A stretch of 64,000 bases of DNA. It comes from Klebsormidium nitens. Lineage: Eukaryota; Plantae; Klebsormidiophyceae. The stretch is from positions 95,907-159,906 of the forward strand of contig DF237128.1 in the NCBI GenBank assembly GCA_000708835.1. The letters run 5' to 3'. The notes beneath the pieces are model-generated. The model saw nothing but the letters and a program-made list of their open reading frames with translations. It was not told the DNA's origin and did not search any database. Positions within the stretch are counted from its first letter, which is position 1, and each line of letters opens with the position of its first letter. This document shows positions 14,801 to 63,578 of the stretch, in pieces. A program made the translations under genes and the position numbers.

Positions 14801-17800
14801 TCTGCCAAGTCCCAGCTTCTCAACAGAGCCAGGTATTTTTTGAAGTACGGCTCCAAGTCCCTGCTACTCTCGAGCGCGTCCGGCCTCAATCAGGGACAAC
14901 TGATCCAATTGCTTGCTTGTCATTTGTGAGAAGCACAAACCTCGATGTGTCTCTCCCTGTGCTTTTTGGCGAAAGGTGGATCTTTGTGGAGGTACATGGA
15001 CCTAGGTCCTAGTTGCTTTCGATCATTCCATTTAGTCATTGGGCATGACGAGTCACTTTTGCTAAGCGGACAGCCCTGACAATCAACAAAAGTACGCAGC
15101 AGAGAGGTGCAGTCCGGGCGATTGTCCGTCCACCCTTCTTGGATCTTATGCTCGCGGGTCTTGAGCAGGTACCCCATCCAGCAGCGGCTGCAGGAGTACC
15201 TGTGGCGGCGGCTGAGCCACCTAGATCAGCGGGAACTCTACGAGCTGCACTACCAGCTCATCACCTTCGGCAAGGTGGGAGCCGCCACGTGGCAACAGCC
15301 CACAAGCAGGGTACCCGTCCCAGCCACGAAAAGGTTGTTTGCACGTTGAAGGCAGGATTGTCCTGGAGCTGCGTTTGGGAACAGATCGGAGAGAGACGTT
15401 TTCTGACAGCTGTCATCCCGTTGCATTCTTGTTCTTAGGTGTTTTGCACGAAGCGGCAGCCCAACTGTTTGGCGTGCCCCATGCGAGATGAGTGCAAGCA
15501 CTATGCGAGCGCCAAGGCCCACAAGTGCGTGCCCTGACCCAGCTCCTATTATGTTCTGCCAGCATTTTTAAGCTGCAGCACCACGGACGTCTGATGCGTT
15601 TGAGGCATCAACAGTTGAAAGCCTTCGACCGGCTTTTTCGAGCACTTTCGTCGAAGTAGGTCACTTGACAGGAGGCTAGCAGCTCTTGAAGACGGCAGAG
15701 CCGTGCTCTTGAAGATCCGTCATCAAGTCTCCAAAACGGGGGAAATAGATTGCTCTTACCTCGGCCAAACAATCTGCTGCTTATCCTCATGACCATCTGT
15801 TGACCCCTCCTGTTGATGGATGCACAGGTTTTCGGCTGCTGTAAGCCTTCAGACCTGACGCCTTGTTTCCCTGTTTGGCAGGGAGCAAAAGCTGGCGCTG
15901 CCAGAAGCCAGCCCGCTTCCCGACCCGCGCACCCCGCCGCCAGTTTCCCCAAGCCCGTCCGCGCCCTCCCCTCCACCTCTTAAGAATCTCAAGGCACCGA
16001 CACCGAGATTCCAACCACACGGACTGGACAGACCACAATTTCCCACCCTGCAGCCAACGGAGCTCAGTCCACAGAAAGGCTACGAGCCCCATAACGTTGG
16101 CGAAGCAAGCGGGGAAGACGATCTCAGCCGCAACTGGGCCGTGCTGAGAGCAACCGGGGGCAGCCACCGGGCGTGGTACACGGAAGTCCGGGACACCGGG
16201 GCTCGGTTCCGACNNNNNNNNNNNNNNNNNNNNNNNNNNNNNNNNNNNNNNNNNNNNNNNNNNNNNNNNNNNNNNNNNNNNNNNNNNNNNNNNNNNNNNN
16301 NNNNNNNNNNNNNNNNNNNNNNNNNNNNNNNNNNNNNNNNNNNNNNNNNNNNNNNNNNNNNNNNNNNNNNNNNNNNNNNNNNNNNNNNNNNNNNNNNNNN
16401 NNNNNNNNNNNNNNNNNNNNNNNNNNNNNNNNNNNNNNNNNNNNNNNNNNNNNNNNNNNNNNNNNNNNNNNNNNNNNNNNNNNNNNNNNNNNNNNNNNNN
16501 NNNNNNNNNNNNNNNNNNNNNNNNNNNNNNNNNNNNNNNNNNNNNNNNNNNNNNNNNNNNNNNNNNNNNNNNNNNNNNNNNNNNNNNNNNNNNNNNNNNN
16601 NNNNNNNNNNNNNNNNNNNNNNNNNNNNNNNNNNNNNNNNNNNNNNNNNNNNNNNNNNNNNNNNNNNNNNNNNNNNNNNNNNNNNNNNNNNNNNNNNNNN
16701 NNNNGCCCGGACAAACGTCGGTCGGCAGCCTAGCGGCACCAGTCAGCGGTTTCGGAGAGGGAGATGCACGCACGGGGGCGCGCCAGTGCCCACAAGACTC
16801 CACCTCAGAACAGGGGTTGGCGCTCCTGAAGAAACTTCGTGAGATGGAGCCTGCGGTCTCGGCGTCGAGCCGGCTCCAGGCGAGAATCGTCCCAGATCCC
16901 GCAATTCTGGCCTTTGCATCCAACCTCCCCCCGCCCAAGCCGGCCAATATGTCGGGTGGAGAGCCTCCGGCGGGACCCGAGAAAGTGCCTTCTTTGAGGC
17001 CCTCCTTACGGGCACCGGCAGCCCCTCACCTACTGCCCCCGCTCGACAAACCGTCAAGCTTGCAGCTTTCTCAGGCAGGGAACCGCCTGGCCGATCTGCC
17101 CCGCTCGTTGACCACAGCCACAGTACGGGAGACTGCTCCACATACAGTGGTCGCCGCCGAGTTGCAACCTCGTCAGCTCAACAGCCCAGGAAAGATTCGT
17201 CAAGAGGAACGACCAGCGCTCACCGACCGCCCTGGTGCGGGCAGCCCCGGGAGCCATCTGGACAGCCCAGCTGTAGCGCACGCGCTGAGCAGACCTGTTG
17301 CGTGTGCAAAACCCAGCGGAGTTTCGCCACGCAGTGCTGCAGCGAGCGGCGGACCGTCGATTGACCGCCCGACAGGCCTCAAACGGTTTGCGGATCTTTC
17401 CATGGGCGCACAGCGGGCCCTCGTTGAGTTGGCGGTTGCGCTCTCGCAGCGTCAAGCCGTCGGCTTTTCTCCGCGCCTCAGTCCCCCCCCCTTGCCAGTC
17501 CCGATCGCCCCTACTTCGCCTCAGCCACAAACTCCCGGCAAAGGTCGCGGGCCAGCGCATGCGCAGGCCCTAGAAGGTCTCAAACGGGTCTGGAGCGCCC
17601 GTCTGACGGAGTTAGAAAAGGCGCCACTCCACAATGGCTCCGGGGGAACTGCTGTCAAAAACGCTTCGCCCAAATTGTCCGCTTTCAACGTCCCACCAAC
17701 CTCTTCCTCAAAGTCCAACTCAGTCAGTAAGATGACCCTGGAACAATCTACCGGGCAGGGACTTGCGAGTCCGTCCTTTTCGAGGGCGATCGTCCCCTAC

Positions 17801-49000: not shown

Positions 49001-49102
49001 AATCTGCACTTCAATTCGTAGACCAAAGCGACCAGAGAGAACCTCGTGCCCCACATCCAAATTTCATTAGATTTTCACGAAGGCAGACAGCTGGCTCTAC
49101 GG

Positions 49103-52100
49103 TTACACGCAGATCTCAGAGAGTGTTTGCCGCTCACATGACTTGGGCAGCGGGTGGTCCTTGGGGTCGAAAAGGATGGTGGTCTCCGCGATCTTGGCGG
49201 TCACGATGTAGGGGTCCATGTTGGACGCGGGCCGCCGGTCCTCGAAATAGCCGTACCCCTTCTGCGCGGTGTCGCGCCCGACGCGGATCGACGCACCCCG
49301 GTTGGCGACGCCCCACGAGAAGGACTCCATGGACGCGGTCTCGTGCTTGCCCGTCAGGCGGCGCTCGTTGCCCTCGCCGTAGCACTCGATGTGCTCCACG
49401 TGCTTGATCGCCAGCTTGCTGATCGCCTCCTCGATGGCCGCCATGCCGCCCTTCTCGCGCATCTCCTTGGTGCTGCACCGGGCGCGAGAGGGAGGGTGAG
49501 GGCGAAAGGGCACCGGGAGCAGTGCTGCTCTAATAGTGGTGACTGGATGAAATTATGAAGCTAAGAATAGATCTTGGAAAGGAACGGGGACGAGAGCTTC
49601 GAGATGCATTGACAGCCTTTCTACTGGCCCTCTTGAAGACTCCGACAGTGTGTAAAACTCGAGGATGCGACCTCGTTGTGATTTCGTGCAAATCTCTGCC
49701 AAAACTGTTGCAATGACGACAACTCCCAACGGACGTCAATAGAAAGCAAGTAAAGATACCAATTCAAACGAAGCAGATACATGATGGCGAAAATTTGTTG
49801 CCGGAGTCGTGTAGCATGAGACTCGCAAATTCTTTGAATTCTATAAAAGTTCACGAACTAGTCACAGCTTCGTTGTAAAGCGGGCGGACGAACATCCGAC
49901 TCGGGGAGCGAAAGGGACAGATGCCTTCGGTCGTGGCTATCTGAAAGAAGTGTCCATTAGACATTTCTATAGACATTTCTACACCCTCTTGACCAGGTTC
50001 TTGGGTTTTGAACGAATTCGAGTCAAGCTGGTCAATACCTGTAGTTGGTGTGGCAACCAGCACCGTTCCAGTCCCCAGGGATCGGCTTGGGGTCAAGAGT
50101 CAACACGACGTCCGCCATCTCCGTTACCCGCTGCGGTGACAGAACAAAATATCTTGATCGATTCATCCCCAGGTTGAGCACTAGCATGAAGGTGCCTCGA
50201 TTTGGAATGTCTGCATGTATATGTAGCAAGCCACCATATAATGTTAAGGCGCTCAGCTCAGATCTTATATAAGACGTTCGTCTGCAAAGGTTCGAAGCAG
50301 ATGGAAGGAGTTGGATGACTGCAGGATGGCGATGTTGACACAAGCGCACACTGCATGTTCAATTGCCAGAGCGGATCGGCTTTTACCCACAAACGGTGAG
50401 CACTCGATAGTCGAGGCTCGATCTGCCTCACCTCGAGAAGGTAGCGAGACATCCACAGCTGGTCGCCGGAATCGATTCCGACACAGGGGCCAACCTGGTA
50501 CTCCCACTGGCAGCGAGAAACAAGGGATCGTCAGTACGAGACGGGGGAATGGAGCCCAAGCATCACCAAGATCGAGACGTTTAGTACCGGGTTATGTCAC
50601 GTCTTGGGACCTGCCTTTGCTCGTGAGATCGTCGAAGTAAGAACAAGTGACCGTGAACGTGCCCCTGACTATTCTGCCCTGCTCTTTTCAGGGCTCCTTC
50701 TTTGAGAGCACAGTCAACATTGTTCATCAAGCTCCACATAATTCGGCCCCTGAAGTCGACTCCCAAAAAAGACGTCCGTGCTTGCTAATTGCGTGGTTGG
50801 AAGAGGAGGAGACGAGTTTAAGAGTATTCACAAATAAAGCCTTGTGTTGGACTGAATCAGACTCACTTCAGTCTTCCGCTTTTTCGTTTGGAATACAGAG
50901 AGCTCTAACAAGGGGCGTTTGTATCATTGATAACAATCACAACAGAAGAAGGTGAAAAGGAATTTCGTGCAAGCTGACCTGTCCGGGCATGACCTCCCCG
51001 TTAATTCCGCTGATGTTGATGCCCGCGTACAGGCATGCCTTGTAGTGCGCATTCACAATCTCACGGCCCCAAGCCTTGTCTGCGCCAACTCCGCAATAGT
51101 ACGGGCCCTGCAATGGTGCAGTCAACCTTGGCTTCAGCAGGGACAGCAGTGCATACTTCTCCTCGTTTTTGGGGTTTTGTCAGTTTCATGAATCCCAAAA
51201 CGAAGTCTTTGCAGTCAAGAGACATTTGTTAAACATAAGGACCTTCTGTTGGCCTGAAGAGCGGGGCTGAACAAGTACATACCACATCTTCAGAACAGAT
51301 GACAGATGGACAAGGTGGTGTTACCTGAGGACCTGGGTAGCCGCCCTTTGGCCAGCCGAGGGGCCAGTTGGTGCCGGCCTGATACAGGGTGTACTCCTGC
51401 TCAATCCCAAACCTGCACGGGGCGCCAAAAATATAAGAAATGCTAGGGCGACAGGGAGATCTCACACGCAAACAAGGGCCTTTCCGTCATGGAAAAAATC
51501 ATCTGCTAGTTATTTTTGTAAGAGCCACACGGCCACAGCAGTCACACCTCTGGGTATCAGAATGCTACATCAGTATGTTGGGAAGAAAATGGGAAATGAA
51601 GAAGGCGCTCTTTTCGCTTACCAGGGCACATGCTCCTTGACCTTCTCCAAGACCTCAGCAGCGGCAAATCTGTGGTTGGTTGGCAGGGGCTCGCCACCAG
51701 GGGTGTAGGTGTCGCACATCACCTGCGCAAGCCACCGCCGCAGGTTAGGCAAAGAGCTCGACGGGTGCATATGCAGATCCAGCCCAGACGGACCATCCAT
51801 GCAAAGTAGATTTGACAGCTTTTGAAAGAACTGCGACAGATTATGTTGACACACTTTGACCTTTTTATTTTTGACCTCTACACTTTGATCCTGCTTGTGA
51901 GAGCAATGCAACCGAGATGATGGCCAAAACGAGTGCGGAGCGCCAGCTCGCCTCTTGTGAAGCTCATCTGCATCCTTTGAGACCTTGCGCATATTGAGGC
52001 TATATTGCAGCTTCTTGTGGGTTCAAGTTGCTTACCAGGATGTTAGCGCCCTTCCTGAAAGGATCCCGGTAAATAGCCTGCGGCCTGCAGTAATGCAGAG

Positions 52101-53550
52101 GCTTGTCAAACCACTGGCAGTCGTGAAAATTCAGTGCAGAATTACTCTGGTTTGCAAACAAGGGCACAACTCAAGTTTTCCACTTTTGTCGAACTCGTGT
52201 CAGCAGTGCTAAGAAAGCTTGAGCGCAATGAGCAGAAGATCCTTCTCAAGATCTGACAACTGAGCGAGTAGAGGGATCGACTCTCACGTCAGATGCAATA
52301 CTTACTTGAGGATGACCTCACTATCGTCTCCGGGGGCCTGACCCGTGCTGGATCCATCGTAGTTCCAGTCTGGGAGCTTGGAAGGGTCGGTTACTGGGCC
52401 CTCGAGCGTCTGCAATGCCAAGGTCCTTGTCAACAAAGACAACATCCAATGTATAAGGTCTGCTAAATGAGAACCATAAAGTGTTACAAAAAAACAGGGA
52501 TCTACATGCGAAACTGACTGCAAAGAATGCTGAACAGGTCTCAACTCTGAATCCAGGTTGGGCTCTTGGTGCGTAGTTTCTTGCTTAAGGTGCCGGAGTT
52601 TTAAGACCAGACGATTGACCTGCAATGTTGAGATCTGGCGAGCAGCAAGCACATAGCGAATAGGACATTGATAAGAAGCAGTGCATGAGGTATTTCTCAC
52701 ATACTTCTGAAGCTGTCATGAATGGTGCATGTTCAGCCCTTGCACAAAATAAGATGTCAGAAAAAGATATTAAAAACATAAAGATATGAGTTTCTGAGGT
52801 CAATGAGCTCACTCTGGCTTTACTTCTTAGATCCAACTTGTGCCCACCGATCCTGCAGAAGAATTCACAGCTCTGCTTAAAGAAGAGAGTCCCCAGTCTG
52901 CAAGCCTCTTTAAGGCTTAGCTCATGGTTTCAGAAGAAACAAAGGGGCGCCGTCTATATTGTCTGCTGAGATTCAGATTAAACACAAACCAGAAGCTGCC
53001 TTGTCCAACTACTTCGAACTGATTCCCCTAGAGTTGAACAAGGTAAGATACAAACGATGAAGCAAAGGCAGACGCCAATTGAGGTCAGCTCATTTGTTCA
53101 GAACATTACCAGCTCGATGCAGCTCAATTCAGTGCCACCGATTCCTAAAGAGGTTCATTATTCGAAAATCGTTAGTTGATAACAGTAGAGCTGGCTTGCT
53201 TTTCCTCAAACACAAAATACAAGAAGTGTGACGAAAGGTGGCGGCGCATCAAGCTTGCCAGCTTGTCCGATGGAAAGGCTGAACCCAAGTCATAACATAT
53301 GTGGTCGGGTAAAAGCAACCAACTGAGTTGACAATCAGGAAGCTAGGGTGCTTTTGTTTCACAACAAAACTCTCTCTATGATAATGAATCAAATGCAAGT
53401 TCAATTTCACTGCTAGATCAGCTGCTTATGCTGCAGGCAATGTGCACCTCAGCTTCAGAGATCGCGTGCTTACCAAACATACTCCGCAATGATCTTGGTG
53501 ACTCCTTCCTTCTCAAGATCCATATTCATAAGATCCGCCAAGGTGGCCAT
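49103..53550 (-). CDS. GLN1: Glutamine synthetase (eukaryotic GSII type), 10 coding exons
   Basis: [84 protein letters not shown] and [15 protein letters not shown]. The N-terminus [12 protein letters not shown] resembles cytosolic GS1. Confidence 0.97.
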
Positions 53551-55173
53551 GTTTCTTCTGCTGATAAAGAGACCGGGAATGTTTGAGAGGAATGCTGCGG
53601 TGACCGATGCGATCCTCAGGTTGGGCAGTTCTACGGAATCGCCGCCAACTATGAGCACAGGAGACAAAGTCGCTGCTCAGCAGACAATGAAGCTACAAGA
53701 TTACCAATTCTTCGTGACAACCAGTTTCTCTGTGGCAATGCTGTACAATTGACGAAGGTTTGTGGAACTGAAGAAGGAAAGGTCTTGCAGAAGGAAGGTC
53801 GAATGCGCATGCAGGCGTACGTACCGACTCTGGAGTCTGTACCATAAGATCTACCTACCTAGGTACCTAGAAGATCTGAGCTCCTGCAACAGAGCATTGC
53901 AGGGCAGCTGTGCGCGAGACGCCATGGATGCGGCGCCCAGCGAACTGCGAGTTCTCTTCTTCACTTGCTGACAAGGACAAGGTTGAAGGCAGTCTTCTGA
54001 GCACTAGAATTCAACACGTGTGATTATGCCATGTGGACCTCGTGATAATTGTCGAGATACCCTAACCGTCGATGGCTGCAGATTCAACTAAAATATCCTC
54101 AACTTTACCAACTTTTGTGCAATGATTGCAGGTACGTCAGCAGATTTGTGAGCCGTCTATGTGCTTCATTTATCGACGGTGAAACCAAGCGCATCGAGAG
54201 GCAGGGGGATCACGCAGGAATTCGACAGGGCGCAGCTAGAAAACAAGTCCTGTTGCTGGACAATCCATCAAGCGGATGGGCCCAGGTTCAGCGTCTCCAT
54301 ATAAAAACAGGAGTAGTTCTCTCCTTGATCTCAGACGATCATGTACAGAAGACCGAGTACTGTATTGCACAGCAAAGTGCCACAGCTTCAAATCTGCCGA
54401 TCTGCAGTTTTGCAATATATTTACATATGTACAGTATTAAACCACCACCCAAGGTATAAATACTCCTGGTAACCAGGAATGCTCATAATCAAGTTCGCAA
54501 CTTGAAAATCGCGACGGGTGCACACTGGACGCACACGTAAAGAAGGTACCCTTGCCTACATAAAAACAGACTGTTTCTGCACGAATTGAGCGGCGGTTTC
54601 GACCTGGCCTTGTTAGTACCACTATGATAGAGTTCTAGAAAGCAAAACCGCCGAAACCGGTGAAGTAATGCTTTAGTTTCTTTGATGTATGAGGTCAAAA
54701 ATGCACAAGCTGGAAGCGAGCGCCTTCGGGCCGAAATTTGAATTTCGGTGGCCCTTGGCGCGAATGCCAGCCGGTTTGCCCCGAGATATACCCGGGATGG
54801 TGGTTTAAGCGGCTGGCGAGCAATATTCGGCGGCGAACATCTCCTTACAACCAGAGTGCGCACACAGGCTAGCTTCAGCAAAATTAAGCCAGAAAACAGC
54901 CTTTGAATCTCATCGATCATCAGGTGCATGCAACAGTGACCATTGCAAATTGCCACATTCTCCACCTCAACTTCTCGCTTCTCTCCCGTGGCATCCAGAG
55001 GGCTGTTTTGCTCTCGTGTAAATCCCTAGTCTCCGATACAAACAGTAGCGTCCGCTTCATAACCTAGGATAATGGCGAAACTGTATCGATGTCTCTTGCG
55101 ATTTTTCGAATTTGTTAGATTGGAGGAAGCTCAAAGGGGGTATCTGTCTATATGGCTCGGGTTGATGGGTTAA

Positions 55174-58100
55174 CTACACTTTCCAACCGTGATCTCTGGC
55201 GACTCGGGTGAAGGCAGCTTTCGCTTCCGCTTCCGAGTACTCAATTCCGCTCTGGAGGGAAGTCTGGTCCAAGCGCGCGTTTCCGCTCATCATCTCGGCA
55301 ATTATCTGCGGAGAAATAGCACACCAACCGTTGGTGACGTTTCTCGTCAACTTGAACGCACACATTCAGTCGCGTCTGCATCCTCACCAGTGGTTACACA
55401 AAGTGCGATACAATGATTGATATCATAACAGTGTGACATACAATTACAACAAAAGCGGTAAAGCGGTTCGGCGCACCCTTCTCCCCGCCTTGTGCGCCTG
55501 CTAGATAAATCTATATTATTGAATTAAACTTAAATCTCTCACCTGTACAAGCACGCTTTCGAGCGCGTATGCGGGGGTCCAGCCGCTTGCGGTCAGCAGC
55601 TCCATGCAGATGCTGCCGCCGACGGTCACGTGCCCAGTGTGGAAGGCGAAGCGCGGGGAGACGACGCGGATGAAGGGCGGCTGCCACGGGAAATCGGACG
55701 GGAAGCGGATCTCCAGGAGCACGGGCACTTCGGCCACGTGGCGCGCCTTGGCCGCCTTTTGCAGGTCCTGCAGGGAGGGACACATGTCAGCGCTCGCTAG
55801 AGATTGGCGCGTGGAGCGAGTGGACGTCTTCCTTTGGGGAGGCTAGTTGTCAAAGAAGGAAGACGGACTGCACCATCCTGAGGTCCGCTCAAGATGATCT
55901 CGTCGCAGATCTGGCAAAAATTGCACCAGCCAAGTCACCTGGCCTCCTTCCTCCCACGTTAGGCATGGCATGTTTCCAAGACGATCCGCTCTAAGGAGAA
56001 TCACAGCAAGATTAGCGAGCTAGAAACGGCAATCCTAGCCCCCCTCACGCACCCCTTCCAGCGTGGACCCCGCGAACAGGCTGGGCCGTAGCTTGACCCG
56101 CCACTTGTACAGGTCCTCCTCGTCCACGTCTACCTCGAACCCCCCGGCCGGCAGCGAGCTCTTCCCTTTGCCCCCCCGGCCCGTTTGCAGGGCCATCATC
56201 TTTGCCAGCTCCTTTTGGATTGCCTGCGTCGCGCTAGCCGAACCCCCGGCTGGGGTCTTTGCCTTAACCCCTCGAAGCCTGCGCCGAGGCGCGCCGCTCC
56301 GCCTCCTGCTCAGCTCGCTCTTTTCGGCCTCGCGCTCAGCGGCCGCGGCGGCTTGGGCCGCGGCCTCGGCGGCCGCCTGCCGCGCCGCCCGCTTCCGCGC
56401 GGTGTGCCGCGCGACCTGCCGTGCGAACCGCGCCTCGCGCACGCTTTCGGTGACGTTTCGGAAGTGCTCGCTCAGGCTGACATTGTCCAGCTTGTCGTCA
56501 GCGATGTTGTGCGCCTGCAACAAAGGATGCAGACGGGAGGAAGTCAGGTGCCTCGAAACTTTCTCAGTGCTTTCGGGGCAGACTGGCCAGTTTATATTCT
56601 TCTCCTTCAGCTCAGCCATGAAGGCAGCCACTTTTACCAGGCCAGATGCACGTCAAGATATATGGTCAGGTGTCACTTTGTCGGCATTTTTCAGCAGCCA
56701 ATGGCTCAAAATGGACAAAGACAACGGAGTGCCATCCCCTTCGACACCGTCTGTGACAGAATCGAAGTCTGCCGAATACGTTGACAGGAGCTTCTCCGAC
56801 GAGTATCCGAGACGGCGATGACTCCAGAGGGATACCTAAGGCTGCGGCTGGTTTGTCACAGGCAGGACTCTTGCCTACCTCAACTTCTCGTCCGGTCGTC
56901 CGGGTACCTGAACCGACAAGTCACCTGAGCTCGGTGTCTATTCTCAGCGACCAAGAAATTACGGTCCGGTCTCTGCGAGTGTTCTCACCCCGCTGACGGT
57001 CGCCCCGTCATAGACCAGCAGGTACCGGATGACGACGTGGTCCTCCTTGCCGGGGGGCACCACGAAGCAGAACGTCCCGTGCGTGCTGGCCGCGCCTTTC
57101 ACCACTTCGCAGATGGCCAGGCACGTGAAGCCGGACTTGTACGTGCCATTGGCCCACCCCGTCAGCGAGTGGCGCGCGCAGTATCCGAGGGAGGTGGTCA
57201 GAGCGGGCGCCAGGTAAATGCCAGCGCCGTGGGCAGCGCCGTACATCTGGTAGCTTCGGGGGGTAAAGGATGACGGACGCTTTGTCAGCGGCAATAGCGT
57301 ATGCTCCGGGAAAGACATTGTGAACGCAAGTGTTGGGCGGTGGGGTCGACGCAGAAGCACGAGGCCGCACTGGCACGGCAACCTCGATCTTGTTGGCTTG
57401 TGAGACTTTATTAGATTGGACTCGCAAGTAAATATTCGATGATCTGCTTATGAGTAGATACAAGGTAAGCAACCACAGACATGATAATGCGTCCAACCTG
57501 AGGCAAAACAAATCCAATCAAGATCCAGTCGGCGCAGACTCTAGTCGATGCAATCTGACAGACACGTCCTTCCTGTAGACCGGTGTAGCGGCGCTTCAGC
57601 TGTGTTCAGTCCACAGCATGCCCCTACGTCATTTGTCGCTTCAATGACAAACGTGCCGCAGATTACGCACCCGTTCATTCTAGCCCAACGAAGCCTTATA
57701 CCAGCGACTCAACGTGTGTGTATCGCGGCCCATAAACCCGTTGCCCAGTCTCACCTGGTGCCGCTCATGGATCGCAGGCCGTTGCGCAGGATTGAGTACC
57801 AGTTCTCGCCGCTGCTCCCGTGGAACGCGAAGAACGAGCCCTTGCTCGCGCGCAGCGCCGCAAACGCGGCCTCCTTCTCGGGGTCCGCCGTCAGCACCAC
57901 GAACTGCGCCGCCGTGTTGGTTAGCGGGAGCAGGTCCGGGTCGGTCAGGTGGCGCAGCGACAGCCGGTTGGAAGAAAGGACGAAGCGGACCAGGTCGTAC
58001 GGAAACATCTCGCGGTCGCGCTCCTTGGGGTCGCGCGTCGGGGTGCTCGGCGCGGGCAGGCCCTGCGCCCGGGAGATGAAGATGAGTGAGGGAGTGACGT

Positions 58101-61100
58101 TGGAGCGGCTCAGAAGTAAAGCGGGGAATGAGGAGTTCGTGGCACGATGTACTATGGTAGCGAAAAAGCACAGAGACGGATACAACCTCAGCATGTGGCC
58201 AGGCGAGCAAAGAAAGAAGTAAGGCCCCAACACCACAATTTGACGCATGGAAACCCGATGGGAATCCGCGCAGTTCGAAATTCAAACCACCGCGATCGTC
58301 TTCTGCCCCGCAACCTCTCTATGGCGACGACTGCGGATCTTGCTCCTTCAGATCAGCCGGAGCGTCAATCATTCCGCCGAACTTCACCCTTACGTGTTCT
58401 GGATTTTTGGCCGCGCGCTGCTTGGCCCGCACGAGCTGCATCCTGTACGCGGGCCGGTTGTACCAGCCGTTGACGAAGGCGGTGATGAGCGCGGCCTCGG
58501 AGCGGCAGCCCGTCAGCTCCTTGAGGGGGGGCACCGCCTCCAGCGCCTCCTTCAGCTGCGCGATCATCTTGATTGCCTTCTCGGTGGAACCCCCGGCGGC
58601 GGCCTGGAAGGCATAGTTCGTGAGAAGCTACCAATCGCTGTTGCTCTTCACTTTCATTTTAGAACCAACCAAAGCAATCTCTGTAGGTCCAGTTCCGGCC
58701 CATGTACGATCAGTCAGGCCAGAATGGGTCAGTGCACGAATCGAGGGCGAAGCGTGTGCGATTCGAAGTGGTTGACCTTCAGCAAATTGGACAACCTGCT
58801 GACATCCTGAGCAATAACGAAGGAAATGCTGCCGAGGTTGTGTAGAACCGTCCAAATCACCATCTGACCATGTGTGAGGACCCAAAATCCGCTAACCTCA
58901 GCTTGTGGCTCCAACTGCTATAAACGCCCCTATACTGTAGAGATACCGACATAATCTGCCCTAACGCTAAGATTTGATAGTGATTTGCAACTTCAGGAGG
59001 ATTAGCCGCCCGGCAAACTTGAAAATCCTCGATTTCGGAAATCTGCCGCTGAAGGCAGGTTAGCCTGACACTATCCAACCAAACACGGACCGTCAACTAC
59101 GCCCCTTACCTGTGCATTAGCGGCCACCGGTTTGTGGGCTCCGCTGCCAGATGCCGCGTTGGGGCTCGAGTTAAACCAGCCGGCTCGGCCGCGGTTCTCG
59201 CGGCCCTCCAGGAGGAACGACGGGAACGGCTCAAAGACAGCCTCGGCGCGCCCGCTCGCGGCCGCGTTGGCCGCCATCGCGAGCTCCAGCTCAACGAGCT
59301 CCGCGTTCTCGAGCACCTCCGGCAAGATGGCCGCGCCCAGGCCCAGCTCCTCGAACCTGCGGCAGAGACATAACAGCGCGGGGTCAGAGCGGGGTCTCAA
59401 GTGGAAGGGAGATGAGGGTTGCTCTTGGTTTTCTGCAAGGGTCCTCAACATCGCTACTCTCAGGATCGCTGAAAGCTTCTTGGTTGCTGTTGAGCGAGCA
59501 TGCACGCTCTTGCAACGGAATGACTCGGGGACATATCTCCACAGATNNNNNNNNNNNNNNNNNNNNNNNNNNNNNNNNNNNNNNNNNNNNNNNNNNNNNN
59601 NNNNNNNNNNNNNNNNNNNNNNNNNNNNNNNNNNNNNNNNNNNNNNNNNNNNNNNNNNNNNNNNNNNNNNNNNNNNNNNNNNNNNNNNNNNNNNNNNNNN
59701 NNNNNNNNNNNNNNNNNNNNNNNNNNNNNNNNNNNNNNNNNNNNNNNNNNNNNNNNNNNNNNNNNNNNNNNNNNNNNNNNNNNNNNNNNNNNNNNNNNNN
59801 NNNNNNNNNNNNNNNNNNNNNNNNNNNNNNNNNNNNNNNNNNNNNNNNNNNNNNNNNNNNNNNNNNNNNNNNNNNNNNNNNNNNNNNNNNNNNNNNNNNN
59901 NNNNNNNNNNNNNNNNNNNNNNNNNNNNNNNNNNNNNNNNNNNNNNNNNNNNNNNNNNNNNNNNNNNNNNNNNNNNNNNNNNNNNNNNNNNNNNNNNNNN
60001 NNNNNNNNNNNNNNNNNNNNNNNNNNNNNNNNNNNNNNNNNNNNNNNNNNNNNNNNNNNNAACGGAATGACTCGGGGACATATCTCCACAGATCTTTCAG
60101 TTGTGCTGCAGCAAAGCGAGATGAAGCACAAAGTGCTGCGCAAGTCGCTCATTAAGCGCGAGTTTTTCCAATCACAGACAATACCTACTCCCTCGCCCTC
60201 TCGAGAGATTTGCACACGGCCTCACCTGTAGAGGCACAGATCGTTGTTGCACGGCCGCAGGCGCATCCCCGGGCTCGCATGCGGCTGCCTGCACACGGGG
60301 CACCACGTGGCAACCTTTCCGAGCTTGGCGCCGACCATCTGCAGGGCGGCCGTGAACACGTTCCCCTCCACCGCCAGAGCCTCGTCCGTGCACCCCAACT
60401 CCGCCCGGTTGATTGCCCCGAGCTCTTCCTCCAGCTCCGCATCAGTGCGCCGGCAGTGCACTAGGGCGTTCAGGTCGAGCGGGGCGCTCTCTGCTGACGT
60501 GGCGCGCGCGTGGCGCACCAGCAGGGACGCGCGAGCGTGCTCGGCGCCGACGGACATGAGCGTGAGGATCGACTTTTCGTCGTCCAGGTGTGGGGAGCGG
60601 ATGCGGGCGTGGGCGCGGAAGAAGCGGTGGATCAGCTCGGGGACCAGCACCTGCGCAAAACACACAAGCTAGGTTATGGAAACTGAGATTCGGGACGCTA
60701 CCAGTCTAACCTAACTTTGGTGTCGACGTTCGTCTTTTGACGTGGCAGCGAATTAGGGGGACGACTCGCAAAAGCTCCTGCATACCTTGAAAAAGAGCAC
60801 TTTATCTAGAGACGTTTGATAACGGGGACAGTTTCACTCCCTCCTTTCCAGCGAGGAGTGGACAATCGGAAGATCTCTGGACAGAACACCATAGGATCGC
60901 CCTGAAGAACAACTGCTGGAAGTGGCCCCTCACGCAACCTTGCCCGGAGAGAACGCAGCATGGCATCGACGAGGGATCATTTGCCTGCACCTCGCTGCGA
61001 CGTTCGCATAGAAGCTGTACCAGCTCAACAGGTGAAAAGGGACCCAAATAAGAGCCAAAAGAAGGTCCAGCAACACGCCGACACCCAAGGACCTTACATG

Positions 61101-63578
61101 ACAAAGTTGAAATGGCCAAGAGCTCGAAATGTCTTCCGAGGTTTGGTACTATTCATCGCCTCGTCCCGGGAACAAGCTGTTACCTTGGATCCGTACGCGC
61201 TCCTCTCGTTCTTCCCCGGCGTGTCCTGGTCCTGATTGTCGCCATCCCTGACCCCCGACTCCCGCCGGCTCGTGCTGACGTCCTGGGTCACGTGGACCTG
61301 CTCAGGCGCCAGCTTCTTCGTAGCTGGGAGGACGGGATCCACCCAGAGAGACGAGGAGAAGGCCAGGCTCGCAACTAGGGGTTCTTCGTAAATCTGCATC
61401 CACGGTAGCACACATGAGCTCGGACAAAAAGGTTCTCGCTTGCAGAATGTACTGAAACGAGGGCCGCTTGAGTACACTGCTATGATGGCTGGACACCCTA
61501 AAGCTTGCGAATGCATACCCTTTCGTCAAGAAGATTCTCTTGACATGTCTTCGATATAATGTTCGCTGGCAGATCTTTCCCAATCCCTCCATGCTGAATT
61601 CGAAAGCAGGGTAAAGGGATACAGCTGCTGCACTCAGGAAGCACCCTTCGGGGCAACTTACCAGGCCGAGCGCGAGAGCGTCCGCCTTTTCCATGAAGCC
61701 TTGCAAGTCCCAGGACAACTTGACACGCAGCAGGTCCGGGATAGCCTCAACGCTGCACCACTGCAGGATACCATACGTGCTCCCTGGAGACAAAGCGGCA
61801 GGCTGTGTGAGCGGTCTCGACTTGTGCTGCTTCAGCTGAGGGCACGAAGGGAGATATGAGACAGGAGGACATTCAGGGCCTCTCTGCCATTTAGATTTCA
61901 AACGCAAGAAGAAAGCAATTCAAGCGAGAGCTCGGCTTAGTGTTGACGACTTACATCTCCAAACGGACCATACAAATTATTCTCTTTCAAAGGCCTTGGG
62001 AGATCCGCCTCAGTTGCATCTATTCCTGGTCTTGGATCATATTGCAGAAATCAAGCAGGCAAGGGAGAAGAAGGTTTTGATGCAAATCAAAGCAGAAAAT
62101 TAGGTACAGTCTCGTTCACCTTCCGCAAACACCTCATCTGCTTCTCCTGCCTCTGCACACTGACACCGCGCCTCCTCTGCAACCTTGTACAGGTACGAGG
62201 CCTTGCGTACCCGCAACTCCCTCTCGCTGACAATGTCGTCTCCTTTAAAAACAAGGACGTGAGTGGTTCAGTCTTGACACTGATAATCACTATGTTTACA
62301 TCTGAGATGTCACGTGTGGGGTGAGGACACACTGTAAGGAGAAGATCATCATTTGCTGTATGCTACTAGAAGTGACGGGCCTCTTGTGTACCTTTCCAGG
62401 AACATTCAAAAGTGCAGTCAAGTTGTTGGATGACTGTGACATGGGGCTTGCCTTGTAAAGATGATACACAACAAGCAGAAGCAAAAGGGGCACAGCCCCA
62501 GATTGCCCAGGAAGATCAATACCGAGACTGCAGATGTTACCTGTGGCCATGTCATAGCCATAGAAGTCTGGCGCTTCATCGTCTGAGTCTTCGCCCTCAT
62601 CGGACATGTCGGACACCTCTTCAGGGTCGTAAGCGTCGTCTGCCTCCTCTTCCTCATCTTCACTTGCCCCGCCTGCAGGCGTTCTTGGCTGCTCTGGCCT
62701 GCTTTGCGTGTCTACAGTACCTACCAGTTTCTCCATAAGGACTGGCACGGTGCAGTCAGCAGGGACTAGCCGCTCCAGCTTCTCGTTGATCCTCTGCAAC
62801 GAAAAAAAGGATTTGCATCTGTGGCTCCTTTGTGGCCGTGTTTGAGCATGGCCCGCAGCCAGCAAAAACCCTCAGGGATTGCAGTCCTCTGCTCATGTCT
62901 TGACTAGGGAGAAGTGATTTGTCATTGTTGGACCACTTTGGTTGGGAAATGGTTGCGCTTTTGCATCATTTTGTCTGGACCAATTTCAGCTGGTAGAGAT
63001 GGTATCAGATTGTCAAAATGCAAAACCTTGAAAGCTTTGAACTGCAGCGCTATCTGACACATCTACCCTCTATGTGCAAGGGCTGCCCTAGACAACATCA
63101 AGAGCCACATTCTGAGGCTTTTAGGCCATCTGTGCTTGTTTTCCAAGCTTTGCTTGAAATCTTGCCTGGTTTCTGAACAAAGCCAAGCAAACGGTTTGCA
63201 AAACAGACATCATCTACATAGTGTGGAGCTGCACTAACATTACAGTTGCAAGGAAGCGCTTGAGCATACCTGTAACATATCTTCCATCTGGCCCTCATAG
63301 GTGGCTGCAGTGACAAAAAACTGGTCTCCATCGTCAATGTCCTTCCCTGTTCTGTGGCCAGACATGAAGGCTGCCGGCAAGGACACACTTAGCTGTCTCC
63401 CAGCCACTGAGATCTTCATGGAGTCTGACCCCACACCCAAGACTTTGACAGTGTCACCATCAGTACCGTCAACCCAGGCTTTGACCTGCTTCTCAATTTC
63501 TCTGCAGCGCTCCGTCACAGCCATCTTCTTGCTGGGTCTTCTTTTCAATCTCTTGATCCAAGTGCGCAGCCGCTGCAT
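55174..63578 (-). CDS. PARP6/8/16-like ADP-ribosyltransferase fused to a C-terminal UBE2Q-like ubiquitin-conjugating (E2) domain
   Basis: Cys-rich CPVCRQPH...PCNNDLCLYRFEELG and VELELAM...FEPFP resemble the PARP6/8 pre-catalytic region. Catalytic FAFHGSSGENWYSILRNGL, YGAAHGAGIYLA and VVIRYLLVY are followed by a helical linker and IQKELAKM...DLYKWRVKL...EIRFPSDFPWQPPFIRVVSP...GHVTVGGSICMELLTASGW...EAKAAFTRVARDHGW*. The start may be 63578 or the next Met. Confidence 0.88.
59547..60060. other. Assembly gap (514 N) in a PARP-gene intron, flanked by a 33-nt exact duplication
   Basis: AACGGAATGACTCGGGGACATATCTCCACAGAT occurs at 59514-59546 and again at 60061-60093. Confidence 0.95.

What the first reader, a model, noticed from the sequence alone, without database searches (positions are those of the whole stretch)
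55174..63578. Single polypeptide joining a mono-ADP-ribosyltransferase to a catalytically intact ubiquitin E2
In-phase splicing links a PARP6/8-like region and ART domain through an Ala/Arg-rich helical linker to a UBE2Q-like UBC domain that retains its active-site Cys (GGSICMELL). From memory, PARP clade-6 proteins with a C-terminal UBC domain have been noted in surveys of fungi and some non-seed plants but not seed plants, and I know of no established mechanism for them. The fusion suggests coupled ADP-ribosylation and ubiquitination of one substrate, or hybrid ADPr-Ub marks, in an early-diverging green lineage. This is the best candidate in the window for an uncharacterised system.
Basis: partly seen in the sequence, partly recalled or inferred. 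Interest (0 to 1): 0.72.

Follow-up and report, generated by a model that had tools for sequence, protein, structure and literature searches.

The report
Known PARP–E2 fusion gene in Klebsormidium
This is a real, expressed 13-exon gene of the streptophyte alga Klebsormidium nitens. Its single protein joins a PARP6/8-type mono-ADP-ribosyltransferase to a UBE2Q-type ubiquitin E2. This "PARP-Ubc" family is already described in fungi, mosses and green algae, but its biochemistry is still untested.

Summary
On the minus strand, 13 GT-AG exons (CDS 55174-63524) translate exactly to the public K. nitens protein GAQ84192.1 (1078 aa).

- **Gap:** the assembly gap (59547-60060) lies inside intron 6. It has identical 33-nt flanks, and spliced contigs of four runs from four studies skip it.
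- **One transcript:** the same contigs join the last ART exon to the linker exon, and that exon to the two UBC exons.
- **Domains:** N-terminal RWD-like fold, C4 zinc finger, helical extension plus ART (closest to PARP16), a 58-residue helix, and a UBC domain closest to UBE2Q1/Q2.
- **Catalytic residues:** His696 and Tyr731 are invariant in 33 homologues. The third triad position is Cys780, not Glu. The E2 Cys1014 is kept in 32 of 33 homologues. FHTGH replaces HPN.
- **Relatives:** homologues with both domains occur in Mesotaenium, Closterium, Coleochaete, mosses, a liverwort and ferns. A conifer homologue lacks the UBC.
- **Literature:** the architecture is published (Citarelli 2010; Perina 2014; fungal "PARP-Ubc"/fPARP2), and no activity has been shown.
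- **Assembly error:** the "Arg-rich" part of the linker comes from two compensating indels in the assembly.

Verdict: a new member of a known, uncharacterised family, of moderate interest. The scan had not noted this architecture elsewhere in the genome.

The parts
55174..63524 (-). Whole coding region of the PARP-UBC gene (13 exons, 12 GT-AG introns, 1078 codons plus a stop at 55174-55176). The mRNA runs past both ends: the 3'UTR goes below 55100 and the 5'UTR lies above 63524.
   Evidence: The joined exons are identical to GAQ84192.1. Eight exons are bounded by RNA joints. RNA contigs run about 1250 nt upstream of 60652, which fits 963 nt of upstream CDS plus a 5'UTR.
62701..63524 (-). Residues 1-116: N-terminal RWD/UBC-like domain (exons 1-2).
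   Evidence: AF2 pLDDT is about 80-95. VIA-align gives Z 8.5 to a SEA-complex RWD, 7.4 and 7.1 to listerin RWDs, and 6.5 to the RNF25 and RWDD1 RWD domains. Nearly all of the top 50 rows are RWD or E2 folds.
62232..62697 (-). Residues 118-173: acidic stretch predicted to be disordered (Asp/Glu-rich).
   Evidence: pLDDT is below 50 in both models. The composition is visible in the translation.
61277..62225 (-). Residues 176-290: a second alpha/beta module whose fold was not assigned (exons 3-5).
   Evidence: pLDDT is about 80-96. The fold searches were filled by residues 1-125, so this part is untested.
60234..60302 (-). C4 zinc-finger motif C438-x2-C441-x13-C455-x4-C460 (PARP6/8-type C4*).
   Evidence: All four Cys are invariant in 33 homologues. 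The motif fits CX2CX9-19CX4C of Perina 2014 (PMC4245714).
56500..60242 (-). Residues 458-811: helical extension plus ART catalytic domain (exons 6-11). His696 = 57820-57822, Tyr731 = 57214-57216, third triad position Cys780 = 57067-57069.
   Evidence: Pfam PARP 1.5e-9. PARP16 4f0d matches at 1.6e-7 with His aligned to its catalytic His. Foldseek to PARP16 gives TM 0.75-0.78. H696 and Y731 are invariant. RNA contigs show no differing letters in exon 10.
56302..56475 (-). Residues 820-877: one long predicted alpha-helix linking the ART and the UBC.
   Evidence: DSSP on the AF2 model gives H820-877 with pLDDT about 74-96.
56273..56318 (-). Stretch read in the wrong frame in the assembly. RNA contigs have one base less at 56273 and an extra T after 56318, which changes 16 residues of the linker.
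   Evidence: table 4: both differences stand in the contigs of X1, X7 and X13; in X17 only the first does, because its contig ends at 56314. Recalculated.
55177..56160 (-). Residues 925-1078: UBC (E2) domain of the UBE2Q type (exons 11-13). Active-site Cys1014 = 55606-55608, His1006 = 55630-55632, His1074 and Trp1076 = 55183-55191.
   Evidence: Pfam UQ_con 3e-9. UBE2Q1 2qgx matches at 3.7e-25 over 147 residues. Foldseek TM is 0.87-0.88 at rmsd 2.5-2.8 A. Cys is present in 32 of 33 homologues and H1006 is invariant.
59547..60060 (.). Assembly gap (514 N) inside intron 6, flanked by identical 33-nt copies at 59514-59546 and 60061-60093.
   Evidence: The intron is spliced out in four runs (joint 59354>60224, cut +2).
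57254..57754 (-). Intron 9, held unspliced at high relative depth in all four runs. Read-through meets a stop after one codon.
   Evidence: Contig 57226-57784 has depth 260.7 in X1, against 483-595 for neighbouring exon bins and 4-17 for other introns. The stop is shown.

Best explanation
**Shown.** The locus is the Klebsormidium nitens member of the PARP-Ubc family (clade-6 PARP with a C-terminal UBCc domain; fungal name fPARP2). One spliced mRNA encodes a 1078-residue protein with these parts, in order:
- an RWD-like domain, an acidic disordered stretch and a second alpha/beta module;
- a C4* zinc finger;
- a helical extension plus ART domain;
- a helix of about 58 residues;
- a UBE2Q-type UBC domain.

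**Inferred from conserved residues.**
- The ART binds NAD+ through His696 and Tyr731. It has no catalytic Glu (Cys780 sits at that position), so it should transfer single ADP-ribose units, as other clade-6 PARPs are thought to do.
- The UBC domain keeps Cys1014 and a complete E2 fold, so E1 should charge it with ubiquitin.
- Like UBE2Q1/Q2, it lacks the Pro and Asn of the HPN motif (it has FHTGH instead). It keeps the equivalents of the UBE2Q1 determinants His409 and Trp414 (His1074, Trp1076).

**Proposed, not shown.** The most likely working model is a bifunctional writer. The N-terminal RWD and zinc-finger modules and the ART select and mono-ADP-ribosylate a target, or the protein itself. 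The tethered E2~Ub, held on a rigid helical arm, then ubiquitylates the same target in cis. By analogy with UBE2Q this may happen without an E3 and on hydroxyl groups. Whether the acceptor is a Ser/Thr/Lys side chain or the ADP-ribose itself is open.
For: **Gene and transcript**
- The spliced model is identical to GAQ84192.1.
- GT-AG joints link ART exon 10, linker exon 11 and UBC exons 12-13 in four runs from four studies. One X1 contig covers the whole of exon 11.

**Domains**
- Pfam PARP and UQ_con both score above their cut-offs.
- PARP16 and UBE2Q1/Q2 are the best solved relatives, both by sequence and by fold (TM 0.75-0.78 and 0.87-0.88).
- The RWD-like fold of residues 1-120 scores Z 6-8.5.

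**Selection on catalytic residues in 33 homologues**
- H696, Y731, the four zinc-finger Cys and H1006 are invariant.
- C1014 is present in 32 of 33.
- GGSICM, H1074 and W1076 are invariant or nearly so.

**A conserved fusion, not an annotation accident**
- All nine closest long representatives carry PARP plus UQ_con.
- About 40 further proteins do so too, from Mesotaenium, Closterium, Coleochaete, Physcomitrium, Ceratodon, Calypogeia, Adiantum and Ceratopteris.
- On a tree of the ZnF-to-ART region, all 48 UBC-bearing proteins fall in one set of 59 rows with 100% SH-aLRT support. This needs 8 label changes, against 39.5 for shuffled labels.

**UBE2Q chemistry.** UBE2Q1/Q2 discharge ubiquitin to Ser, Thr, glycerol and glucose, lack HPN, and depend on Y343, H409 and W414 (bioRxiv 10.1101/2023.03.05.531151).
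Against: - No enzymatic activity has been measured for any PARP-Ubc protein, fungal ones included (PMC13720257).
- The third ART position is Cys here and Ile in most homologues. Its effect is unknown.
- UBE2Q1 Tyr343 is replaced by an invariant His, so the UBE2Q-like ester chemistry may not carry over.
- The loop residues that canonical E2s use to bind RING E3s are kept (aromatic in FPW/FPF, and TPA/SPA; from my own knowledge, read off). Ordinary E3-dependent action is therefore not excluded.
- A large share of transcripts may retain intron 9 and encode only a truncated, ART-dead N-terminal part.
- No PAE or coordinates were available, so nothing is known about contacts between the ART and the UBC.
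- RNA support rests on assembled contigs whose library type is only guessed. Their spliced form is the argument that they are RNA.
Confidence: 0.75

Rival explanations
1. Self-contained writer of the hybrid ADP-ribose-ubiquitin ester. The ART places mono-ADP-ribose on a target, and the tethered UBE2Q-like E2~Ub esterifies ubiquitin onto a ribose hydroxyl of that ADP-ribose without an E3. In animals this job is done by DELTEX E3s working with PARPs.
For: - UBE2Q1/Q2 transfer ubiquitin to sugar and other hydroxyl groups without an E3 (10.1101/2023.03.05.531151).
- Ester-linked ubiquitin on protein-bound mono-ADP-ribose exists in cells (PMC12000418).
- The E2 here is of the UBE2Q type, lacks the HPN Asn needed for isopeptide formation, and keeps the His and Trp determinants.
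- The ART-E2 order and the helical tether are conserved across streptophytes.
Against: - This is purely inferential. No ADPr-Ub product has been reported for any PARP-Ubc protein.
- UBE2Q1 Tyr343 is His here.
- The acceptor preference of this E2 clade is unknown.
Confidence: 0.18
2. The two activities are ordinary and only loosely coupled. The E2 works with RING or U-box E3s on Lys residues. The ART either marks substrates for that ubiquitylation or regulates the E2 by automodification, which would include controlling the protein's own turnover.
For: - E3-contact loop residues of canonical E2s are retained (FPW/FPF and TPA/SPA; their role is from my own knowledge).
- RWD domains are proposed E2-interacting modules (PMC10450202, PMC13720257).
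- Some homologues add a UBA domain, which points to ubiquitin binding.
Against: The HPN Asn that canonical E2s use for Lys attack is missing throughout the family. UBE2Q1/Q2, the closest E2s, react poorly with Lys.
Confidence: 0.3
3. One or both domains are non-catalytic. For example, the UBC could act as a ubiquitin- or E2-binding module like a UEV or RWD domain, or the ART could act as an NAD+/ADP-ribose sensor.
For: - No activity has been shown for the family.
- One homologue (Coleochaete P0009) has Tyr in place of the E2 Cys.
- K. nitens has an unusual Cys at the third ART position.
- Paralogues and a conifer orthologue do without the UBC.
Against: Cys1014 is kept in 32 of 33 homologues, with an invariant GGSICM context. 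H696 and Y731 are invariant. UEV-type domains typically lose the Cys.
Confidence: 0.1
4. Artefact: two neighbouring genes (a PARP and an E2), or a mis-join across the assembly gap, read as one gene.
For: There is an N gap within the finding. Only contigs, not raw reads, were available.
Against: - The gap is intronic, has duplicated flanks, and is spliced out in four runs.
- Spliced joints connect the ART exon to the linker and UBC exons in phase, with no stop.
- The same collinear architecture occurs in more than 40 proteins of other species.
Confidence: 0.02

Closest known systems
Fungal PARP-Ubc / fPARP2 (clade 6A of Citarelli 2010; e.g. Aspergillus fumigatus Af-PARP2)
   Same: The domain order is the same: RWD-like N-terminus, C4* zinc finger, helical extension, Glu-less ART and a C-terminal UBCc of the UBE2Q subfamily with its Cys. 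The size is similar (fungal mean about 1154 aa against 1078 here). Function is untested in both (PMC2964712, PMC13720257, bioRxiv 10.64898/2026.07.25.740670).
   Different: - This is a streptophyte protein.
[quoted passage not shown]
- No named fungal sequence was retrieved here, so common origin with the fungal fusion was not tested by a tree.
- The 2026 preprint calls the fusion fungus-specific, which and Perina 2014 contradict.
Physcomitrium patens and other streptophyte PARP-UBC proteins (P0157, P0003 Mesotaenium, P0005 Adiantum and others)
   Same: These are orthologue-level relatives: 31-38% identity over the full length and about 50-54% in the ART. They have the same PF00644 + PF00179 architecture and the same invariant residues. 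The moss protein was noted by Perina 2014.
   Different: K. nitens has Cys rather than Ile at the third ART triad position. Some lineages have paralogues or orthologues without the UBC (Physcomitrium P0071, Cryptomeria P0213).
Human PARP6 / PARP8 (and PARP16)
   Same: They are clade-6 ARTs with His-Tyr and no Glu. They have the helical extension, and in PARP6/8 the C4* zinc finger and RWD domain(s) (PMC10450202). PARP16 is the best solved match.
   Different: The human proteins end shortly after the ART and have no E2 domain. PARP16 has a transmembrane helix instead.
Human UBE2Q1 / UBE2Q2
   Same: They are the best sequence and fold match for the UBC domain (3.7e-25; TM 0.88). They share the active-site context GG(A/S)ICMELLT..GW, the lack of the HPN motif, and the equivalents of His409 and Trp414. 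UBE2Q also has an N-terminal RWD.
   Different: UBE2Q has no ART. Its Tyr343 is an invariant His here, inside a two-residue-longer FHTGH loop, and the C-terminal H..GW loop is three residues shorter.
DELTEX E3s with PARPs (e.g. DTX3L-PARP9; MARUbylation)
   Same: They are a functional analogy only: an ADP-ribosyltransferase physically coupled to ubiquitin-transfer machinery. That pairing produces ubiquitin esterified to ADP-ribose (PMC12000418).
   Different: It is a separate-subunit complex built on a RING-DTC E3, not an E2. There is no homology beyond the PARP fold, and nothing shows that PARP-Ubc makes this mark.

Membership tests
Clade-6 PARPs (PARP6/8/16-like mono-ARTs) | PARP-type ART fold with the NAD+-binding His and Tyr, and no catalytic Glu at the third triad position | tested here: met
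   Pfam PF00644 scores 38.1 bits against a cut-off of 26.7. His696 aligns with the PARP16 catalytic His. H696 and Y731 are invariant. The third position is Cys780 here and Ile in most homologues. Foldseek to PARP16 gives TM 0.75-0.78.
Clade-6 PARPs (PARP6/8/16-like mono-ARTs) | Helical extension (HE / ARTD15_N) preceding the ART | tested here: met
   The Foldseek alignment to PARP16 chains covers about 343 columns including the helical part. The Pfam ARTD15_N hit is weak and below its cut-off (0.0086).
PARP6/8 subfamily | C4* zinc finger CX2CX9-19CX4C upstream of the HE | tested here: met
   C438-x2-C441-x13-C455-x4-C460, with all four Cys invariant in 33 homologues. Zinc binding itself was not tested.
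PARP6/8 subfamily | N-terminal RWD domain(s) | tested here: inconclusive
   The model of residues 1-120 matches RWD and E2 folds at Z 6-8.5, with rmsd 3-4 A over 90-110 residues. These dominate the top 50 rows, but such Z values are in the range the tool calls 'middling'. Pfam RWD did not hit. Foldseek E-values were no better than 0.15. The second module (176-290) is untested.
PARP-Ubc / fPARP2 architecture | UBCc domain C-terminal to the ART on the same polypeptide, with the active-site Cys | tested here: met
   One open frame runs across RNA-supported joints. PF00179 scores 37 bits against a cut-off of 27. Cys1014 sits in GGSICMELL.
PARP-Ubc / fPARP2 architecture | Common descent with the fungal fusion (one clade) | not tested
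   No named fungal sequence was retrieved. The tree shows one UBC-bearing clade among the 135 nearest relatives, but most rows have no taxon.
UBE2Q subfamily of E2 enzymes | UBC fold closest to UBE2Q, with catalytic Cys and without the HPN motif | tested here: met
   2qgx at 3.7e-25 and 1zuo at 3.3e-23, against about 1e-6 for UBE2D-type E2s. TM is 0.87-0.88. FHTGH replaces HPN: the His is kept, and the Pro and Asn are absent.
UBE2Q subfamily of E2 enzymes | Non-sequential Y343 / H409 / W414 activity determinants of UBE2Q1 | tested here: not met
   By alignment, Tyr343 corresponds to the invariant His1006. His409 corresponds to His1074 and Trp414 to Trp1076, allowing a 3-residue shorter loop. 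That extension beyond the printed alignment is my inference. Two of the three determinants are kept.
Bifunctional ART + E2 enzyme (activity) | NAD+-dependent mono-ADP-ribosylation and an E1-dependent ubiquitin thioester on Cys1014 | not testable with these tools
   This needs recombinant protein assays. None is reported for any family member.

The most novel reading that the evidence does not exclude
PARP-Ubc proteins, including this algal one, are single-chain, E3-independent writers of the hybrid ADP-ribose-ubiquitin ester. The ART would install mono-ADP-ribose, and the tethered UBE2Q-type E2 would esterify ubiquitin onto it. That would make 'MARUbylation' an ancient eukaryotic mark, predating the animal DELTEX-based route and shared by fungi and streptophytes. 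A weaker corollary is that PARP6/8 (RWD..ART) and perhaps UBE2Q (RWD..UBC) are derivatives of such a fusion that lost one module.
Probability: 0.15. Interest if true: 0.85.

Novelty: new member of a known kind. Interest (0 to 1): 0.36.

Why it matters
The locus itself is ordinary in one sense. The gene is already annotated (GAQ84192.1), and its PARP-plus-UBCc architecture has been in the literature since 2010-2014.

Its value lies in the context it adds.
- **The fusion is older and wider than fungi.** It is expressed and under selection in a streptophyte alga, and it is widespread in Zygnematophyceae, Coleochaete, bryophytes and ferns. This contradicts a recent statement that it is fungus-specific. 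It fits an old fusion that was later trimmed: the conifer homologue and a moss paralogue lack the UBC.
- **A sharper hypothesis is now possible.** Two recent lines of work make the long-standing question of what a PARP fused to an E2 does directly testable. One is the E3-independent, hydroxyl-directed chemistry of UBE2Q. The other is the discovery of ubiquitin esterified to protein-bound ADP-ribose. The test needs a simple recombinant system.
- **A practical correction.** The public protein has 16 frameshifted residues in the linker, and intron 9 retention may produce a truncated isoform. Both matter for anyone cloning the gene.

Tried and rejected
- **Exon-by-exon Pfam.** The PARP hits on single exons were weak and below cut-off. 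The domain only scored properly on the full public protein.
- **PDB search with ART exon 10 alone.** It gave only chance antibody hits.
- **A possible extra exon at 61940-62050.** It has an open frame and a good GTAAGT donor, so I considered it. I rejected it because its phase does not fit exon 4 and the model identical to GAQ84192.1 omits it. No RNA joints were available for exons 1-5, because the single read-laying run covered 55100-60700 only.
- **Foldseek on the N-terminal model.** Nothing scored at E<=0.001. VIA-align was needed.
- **Rfam scan of 54.5-64 kb.** I looked for an intron-hosted RNA that could explain the abundant intron 9 contig. There were no hits.
- **Taxon names for metagenomic PARP-UBC homologues.** The cluster look-ups returned no organism names, so the wider distribution outside streptophytes and the relation to fungi remain open.
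- **Word search with Mesotaenium P0003, region 500-1142.** Only 45 of the 8000 candidates scored reached E<=1e-5. I suspect, without testing it, that low-complexity linker words filled the candidate list. I repeated the search on the ART region of P0151, which still returned no fungal proteins.
- **Earlier scan notes.** They held only this same finding.
- **Joined model.** I did not send a hand-joined spliced protein to any search tool. The joined frame was checked only locally. The identical public protein id was used afterwards.

Full report
**What is in the sequence**

The finding lies on the minus strand. Stop-to-stop open frames and splice-site inspection showed a multi-exon gene. I then used homologous proteins found with one exon in a local tblastn against the window. 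One of them, P0151, matched every exon at about 100% identity. A 13-exon model with GT-AG borders translates to exactly the 1078 residues of P0151.

P0151 is GAQ84192.1 / UniRef100_A0A1Y1I2K5, "protein with ubiquitin conjugating enzyme domain" of Klebsormidium nitens. The window is therefore K. nitens DNA, and the gene is already annotated. The CDS runs from 63524 (Met1) to the stop at 55174-55176. Met1 of the annotation aligns with Met1 of the homologues.

**The assembly gap (tested first)**

The 33 bases before the gap (59514-59546) are identical to the 33 bases after it (60061-60093). This is what two overlapping contig ends look like when a scaffolder has failed to merge them.

The gap lies entirely within intron 6 (59357-60225). 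Exon 6 ends in ..CLY plus two bases, and exon 7 continues in phase with (R)FEELGLG. Spliced contigs of four runs skip from 59354 to 60224 (cut +2). The coding sequence is therefore continuous and in frame whatever the true gap length is. If the flanks are collapsed, the intron would be about 322 nt. That figure is an inference.

**One transcript or two**

The index search found 20 runs from seven studies that hold the stretch or part of it, 18 of them with 0.43-0.84 of the sampled words. I laid four runs from four studies, carrying two organism labels, on 55100-60700.

- All contigs were at least 99% identical to the window.
- Seven joints were seen, and every one has CT..AC on the plus strand (GT..AG on the gene's strand). 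After the stated cut shifts they coincide with the annotated exon borders.
- The joint 56513>56988 links ART exon 10 to linker exon 11, with 121-126 nt on the shorter side in three runs.
- One X1 contig covers the whole of exon 11 (56052-56515).
- The joints 55766>56052 and 55305>55543 link exon 11 to UBC exons 12 and 13 on single contigs in X7, X13 and X17.
- Contigs of 2.4 kb run from exon 9 to about 1250 nt upstream of 60652. This fits the 963 nt of upstream CDS plus a 5'UTR.
- The eight exons joined at these borders give one open frame of 757 codons ending at the annotated stop.

The library type of the runs is only guessed as RNA. The spliced form of the contigs is the argument that they are RNA.

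**A correction to the linker**

The contigs of X1, X7 and X13 lack one base at 56273 and carry an extra T after 56318; the X17 contig ends at 56314 and shows only the first difference (table 4). Recomputing the exon gives ..AEKKRAEQEAERRASAQASGVK.. in place of the assembly's ..AEKSELSRRRSGAPRRRLRGVK... Strain differences cannot be fully excluded.

**Domains**

- **Pfam** on P0151 finds PARP (1.5e-9, residues 680-748) and UQ_con (3e-9, residues 978-1042), both above their curated cut-offs.
- **ART region by sequence.** It matches only PARP16 well among solved structures (1.6e-7). FAFHGS aligns with the PARP16 segment that holds its catalytic His.
- **UBC region by sequence.** It matches UBE2Q1 (2qgx, 3.7e-25, 147 residues) and UBE2Q2 (1zuo, 3.3e-23). 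This is far better than other E2s, which score about 1e-6.
- **Full-length AlphaFold2 model**, built on 33 homologues (mean pLDDT 78.7, pTM 0.61). It gives confident blocks at 1-116, 176-290, 318-517, 556-811 and 899-1078. It gives disordered stretches at 118-173, 291-314, 519-553 and 874-895, and a single helix at 820-877.
- **Foldseek** matches the model to PARP16 (TM by target 0.75-0.78) and to UBE2Q1/Q2 (TM 0.87-0.88, rmsd 2.5-2.8 A).
- **N-terminal model** (residues 1-316, pLDDT 80). It gave no strong Foldseek hit. With VIA-align, residues 1-120 match RWD and E2 folds almost exclusively: a SEA-complex RWD at Z 8.5, listerin RWDs at 7.4 and 7.1, UFC1 at 7.4, the Knl1 RWD at about 7, and the RNF25, RWDD1 and GCN2 RWDs at 6.2-6.5. 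This is consistent with the RWD domains described for PARP6/8 and fPARP2 (PMC10450202, PMC13720257), but the Z values are moderate. The module at 176-290 was not assigned.

**Catalytic residues and selection**

The alignment covers 33 full-length homologues that carry both domains.

- **Zinc finger.** The four Cys (C438-x2-C441-x13-C455-x4-C460) are invariant. The spacing fits the CX2CX9-19CX4C motif of Perina 2014.
- **ART.** His696 and Tyr731 are invariant. The third triad column is Ile in most sequences and Cys780 in K. nitens. No differing letters were seen in the RNA contigs over exon 10. It is never Glu, so mono-ADP-ribosylation is expected. That rule comes from the PARP literature, as cited in PMC13720257.
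- **E2.** Cys1014 is present in 32 of 33 sequences; Coleochaete P0009 has Tyr. The context TGHVTVGGSICME is nearly invariant. The canonical HPN motif is replaced by FHTGH.
- **UBE2Q1 determinants.** These were reported as Y343, H409 and W414 (bioRxiv 10.1101/2023.03.05.531151). Tyr343 corresponds to the invariant His1006. His409 and Trp414 correspond to the near-invariant His1074 and Trp1076 if the loop is three residues shorter. The printed alignment stops just before this point, so that last step is my inference.

**Relatives**

- An exhaustive HMMER search with ART exon 9 found 855 proteins at E<=0.001.
- The nine closest long representatives all carry PARP plus UQ_con, collinear with the window's exons.
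- Word searches added named proteins with PF00644 + PF00179 from Mesotaenium endlicherianum, Closterium, Physcomitrium patens, Ceratodon purpureus, Calypogeia fissa, Adiantum (two species) and Ceratopteris richardii. Coleochaete scutata was identified by a cluster look-up. There were also many metagenomic proteins, some with a UBA domain.
- HMMs built locally from the alignment classed 53 of the 188 proteins then stored as ART+UBC, 103 as ZnF+ART without a UBC (five of them also with the N-terminal module), and 32 as ART alone.
- On an IQ-TREE tree of the ZnF-to-ART region (135 rows), all 48 UBC-bearing proteins fall in one set of 59 rows with 100% SH-aLRT support. This needs 8 label changes, against 39.5 for shuffled labels. 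The fusion thus marks one subfamily among the nearest relatives. Some of the 11 rows without a UBC inside that set may be fragments. P0002, for example, is a transcriptome ORF that ends 62 residues after the ART.
- A conifer, Cryptomeria japonica, has a homologue with the RWD-like, ZnF and ART parts. All three annotated isoforms (695-732 aa) lack a UBC. Physcomitrium also has a second paralogue without a UBC (P0071).
- The fusion was therefore not seen in any seed plant. The clade-6 core is nevertheless not absent from all seed plants. Absence from angiosperms was not tested.

**Literature**

- Citarelli et al. 2010 (PMC2964712) described clade 6A fungal PARPs with a C-terminal UBCc that keeps its Cys. 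They noted clade 6 proteins in Physcomitrella, and said that no streptophyte algal genome was then available.
- Perina et al. 2014 (PMC4245714) state that PARP6/8 homologues of Ascomycota, Basidiomycota, Physcomitrella and Chlamydomonas have an added UBCc domain.
- A 2026 preprint (10.64898/2026.07.25.740670) names the protein PARP-Ubc and assigns its E2 to the UBE2Q subfamily. It finds the protein in 322 of 534 fungal genomes but calls the fusion fungus-specific. The data here and Perina 2014 contradict that last point.
- A 2026 review (PMC13720257) gives the fPARP2 domain scheme as RWD, C4*, HE, ART and E2. It says experimental validation of the domains' roles is outstanding.
- No paper in the library discusses the Klebsormidium protein.

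**How it most likely works**

Shown: one mRNA and one polypeptide, intact folds, and conserved catalytic residues in both domains.

Inferred: the ART mono-ADP-ribosylates, and the E2 is charged by E1 on Cys1014.

Proposed: the long helix (about 58 residues) holds the E2~Ub at a fixed reach from the ART, so that both act on the same target in cis.

Two findings in the literature make one specific version attractive. UBE2Q1/Q2 discharge ubiquitin without an E3 onto Ser, Thr, glycerol, glucose and maltoheptaose. Ubiquitin esterified to protein-bound mono-ADP-ribose exists in cells (PMC12000418). A tethered UBE2Q-type E2 could therefore ubiquitylate the ADP-ribose placed by its own ART.

I rate that specific version at about 0.15-0.2. 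It competes with ordinary E3-assisted or Ser/Thr-directed ubiquitylation of ART targets, and with a regulatory or non-catalytic role for one of the domains. Points against it are the Tyr343-to-His change and the retained E3-contact loop residues.

**Seen in passing**

Intron 9 splits the ART between His696 and Tyr731. It is present as an unspliced contig (57226-57784) in all four runs, at roughly half the depth of the exon contigs. Other introns appear at 4-17 in X1, and intron 11 at 4.4 in X7; the remaining introns are not covered in X7, X13 or X17. Read-through meets a stop after one codon. Contig depths are crude, so this is a lead and not a measurement. Rfam found no RNA family in the region.

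- Exons were searched by reference.
- No hand-joined protein was sent to a search tool. The joined frame was checked only in local scripts.
- The identical public protein id was used for the family, structure and homology tools.

**Verdict**

The gene is a real, expressed member of the known but biochemically uncharacterised PARP-Ubc family. It is not a new kind of system.

Noticed in passing
window 57254-57754 (intron 9): An unspliced contig spanning the whole intron (57226-57784) occurs in all four RNA-like runs, at about half the depth of the flanking exon contigs. Other introns are at background in the same runs. Retention would stop translation one codon into the intron, giving a protein without Tyr731, the rest of the ART, or the E2. 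This could be regulated intron retention.
   Followed up: partly
window 56273 and 56318 (exon 11): The RNA contigs of X1, X7 and X13 differ from the assembly by one missing base and one extra T, 45 nt apart; the X17 contig ends at 56314 and shows only the first. The public protein GAQ84192.1 therefore carries 16 frameshifted residues in the linker (SELSRRRSGAPRRRLR in place of KRAEQEAERRASAQAS).
   Followed up: yes
window 59514-59546 and 60061-60093: The identical 33-nt copies on both sides of the 514-N gap suggest overlapping contig ends and a spurious gap. A second gap at 16214-16704 in the window was not examined.
   Followed up: partly
P0213/P0220/P0221 (Cryptomeria japonica XP_057817025.2, XP_057817024.2, XP_057817026.2): A conifer, which is a seed plant, has a clade-6 PARP with the RWD-like N-terminus, the C4 zinc finger and the ART, but no UBC domain in any of its three annotated isoforms. 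The PARP6/8-like core is therefore not confined to non-seed plants, even though the E2 fusion was not seen in one.
   Followed up: partly
P0071 (Physcomitrium patens XP_024362076.1, 939 aa): The moss has a second paralogue with the N-terminal module, ZnF and ART, but a non-E2 C-terminal tail. It exists alongside the PARP-UBC protein P0157.
   Followed up: no
P0004, P0022, P0130, P0162-P0170, P0174, P0218: Several transcriptome and metagenomic PARP-UBC homologues carry a UBA domain upstream of the zinc finger. This is a further link to ubiquitin. P0219, from Diplonema japonicum, has PARP plus UBA without a detected UBC.
   Followed up: no
bioRxiv 10.64898/2026.07.25.740670: The preprint states that the PARP6-UBCc fusion is present only in fungi. 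The streptophyte proteins found here, and Perina 2014, contradict that.
   Followed up: yes
window ~49100-52700, minus strand: ORF pieces downstream of the gene contain motifs that I recall from glutamine synthetase (e.g. [17 protein letters not shown]). No tool was run on them.
   Followed up: no
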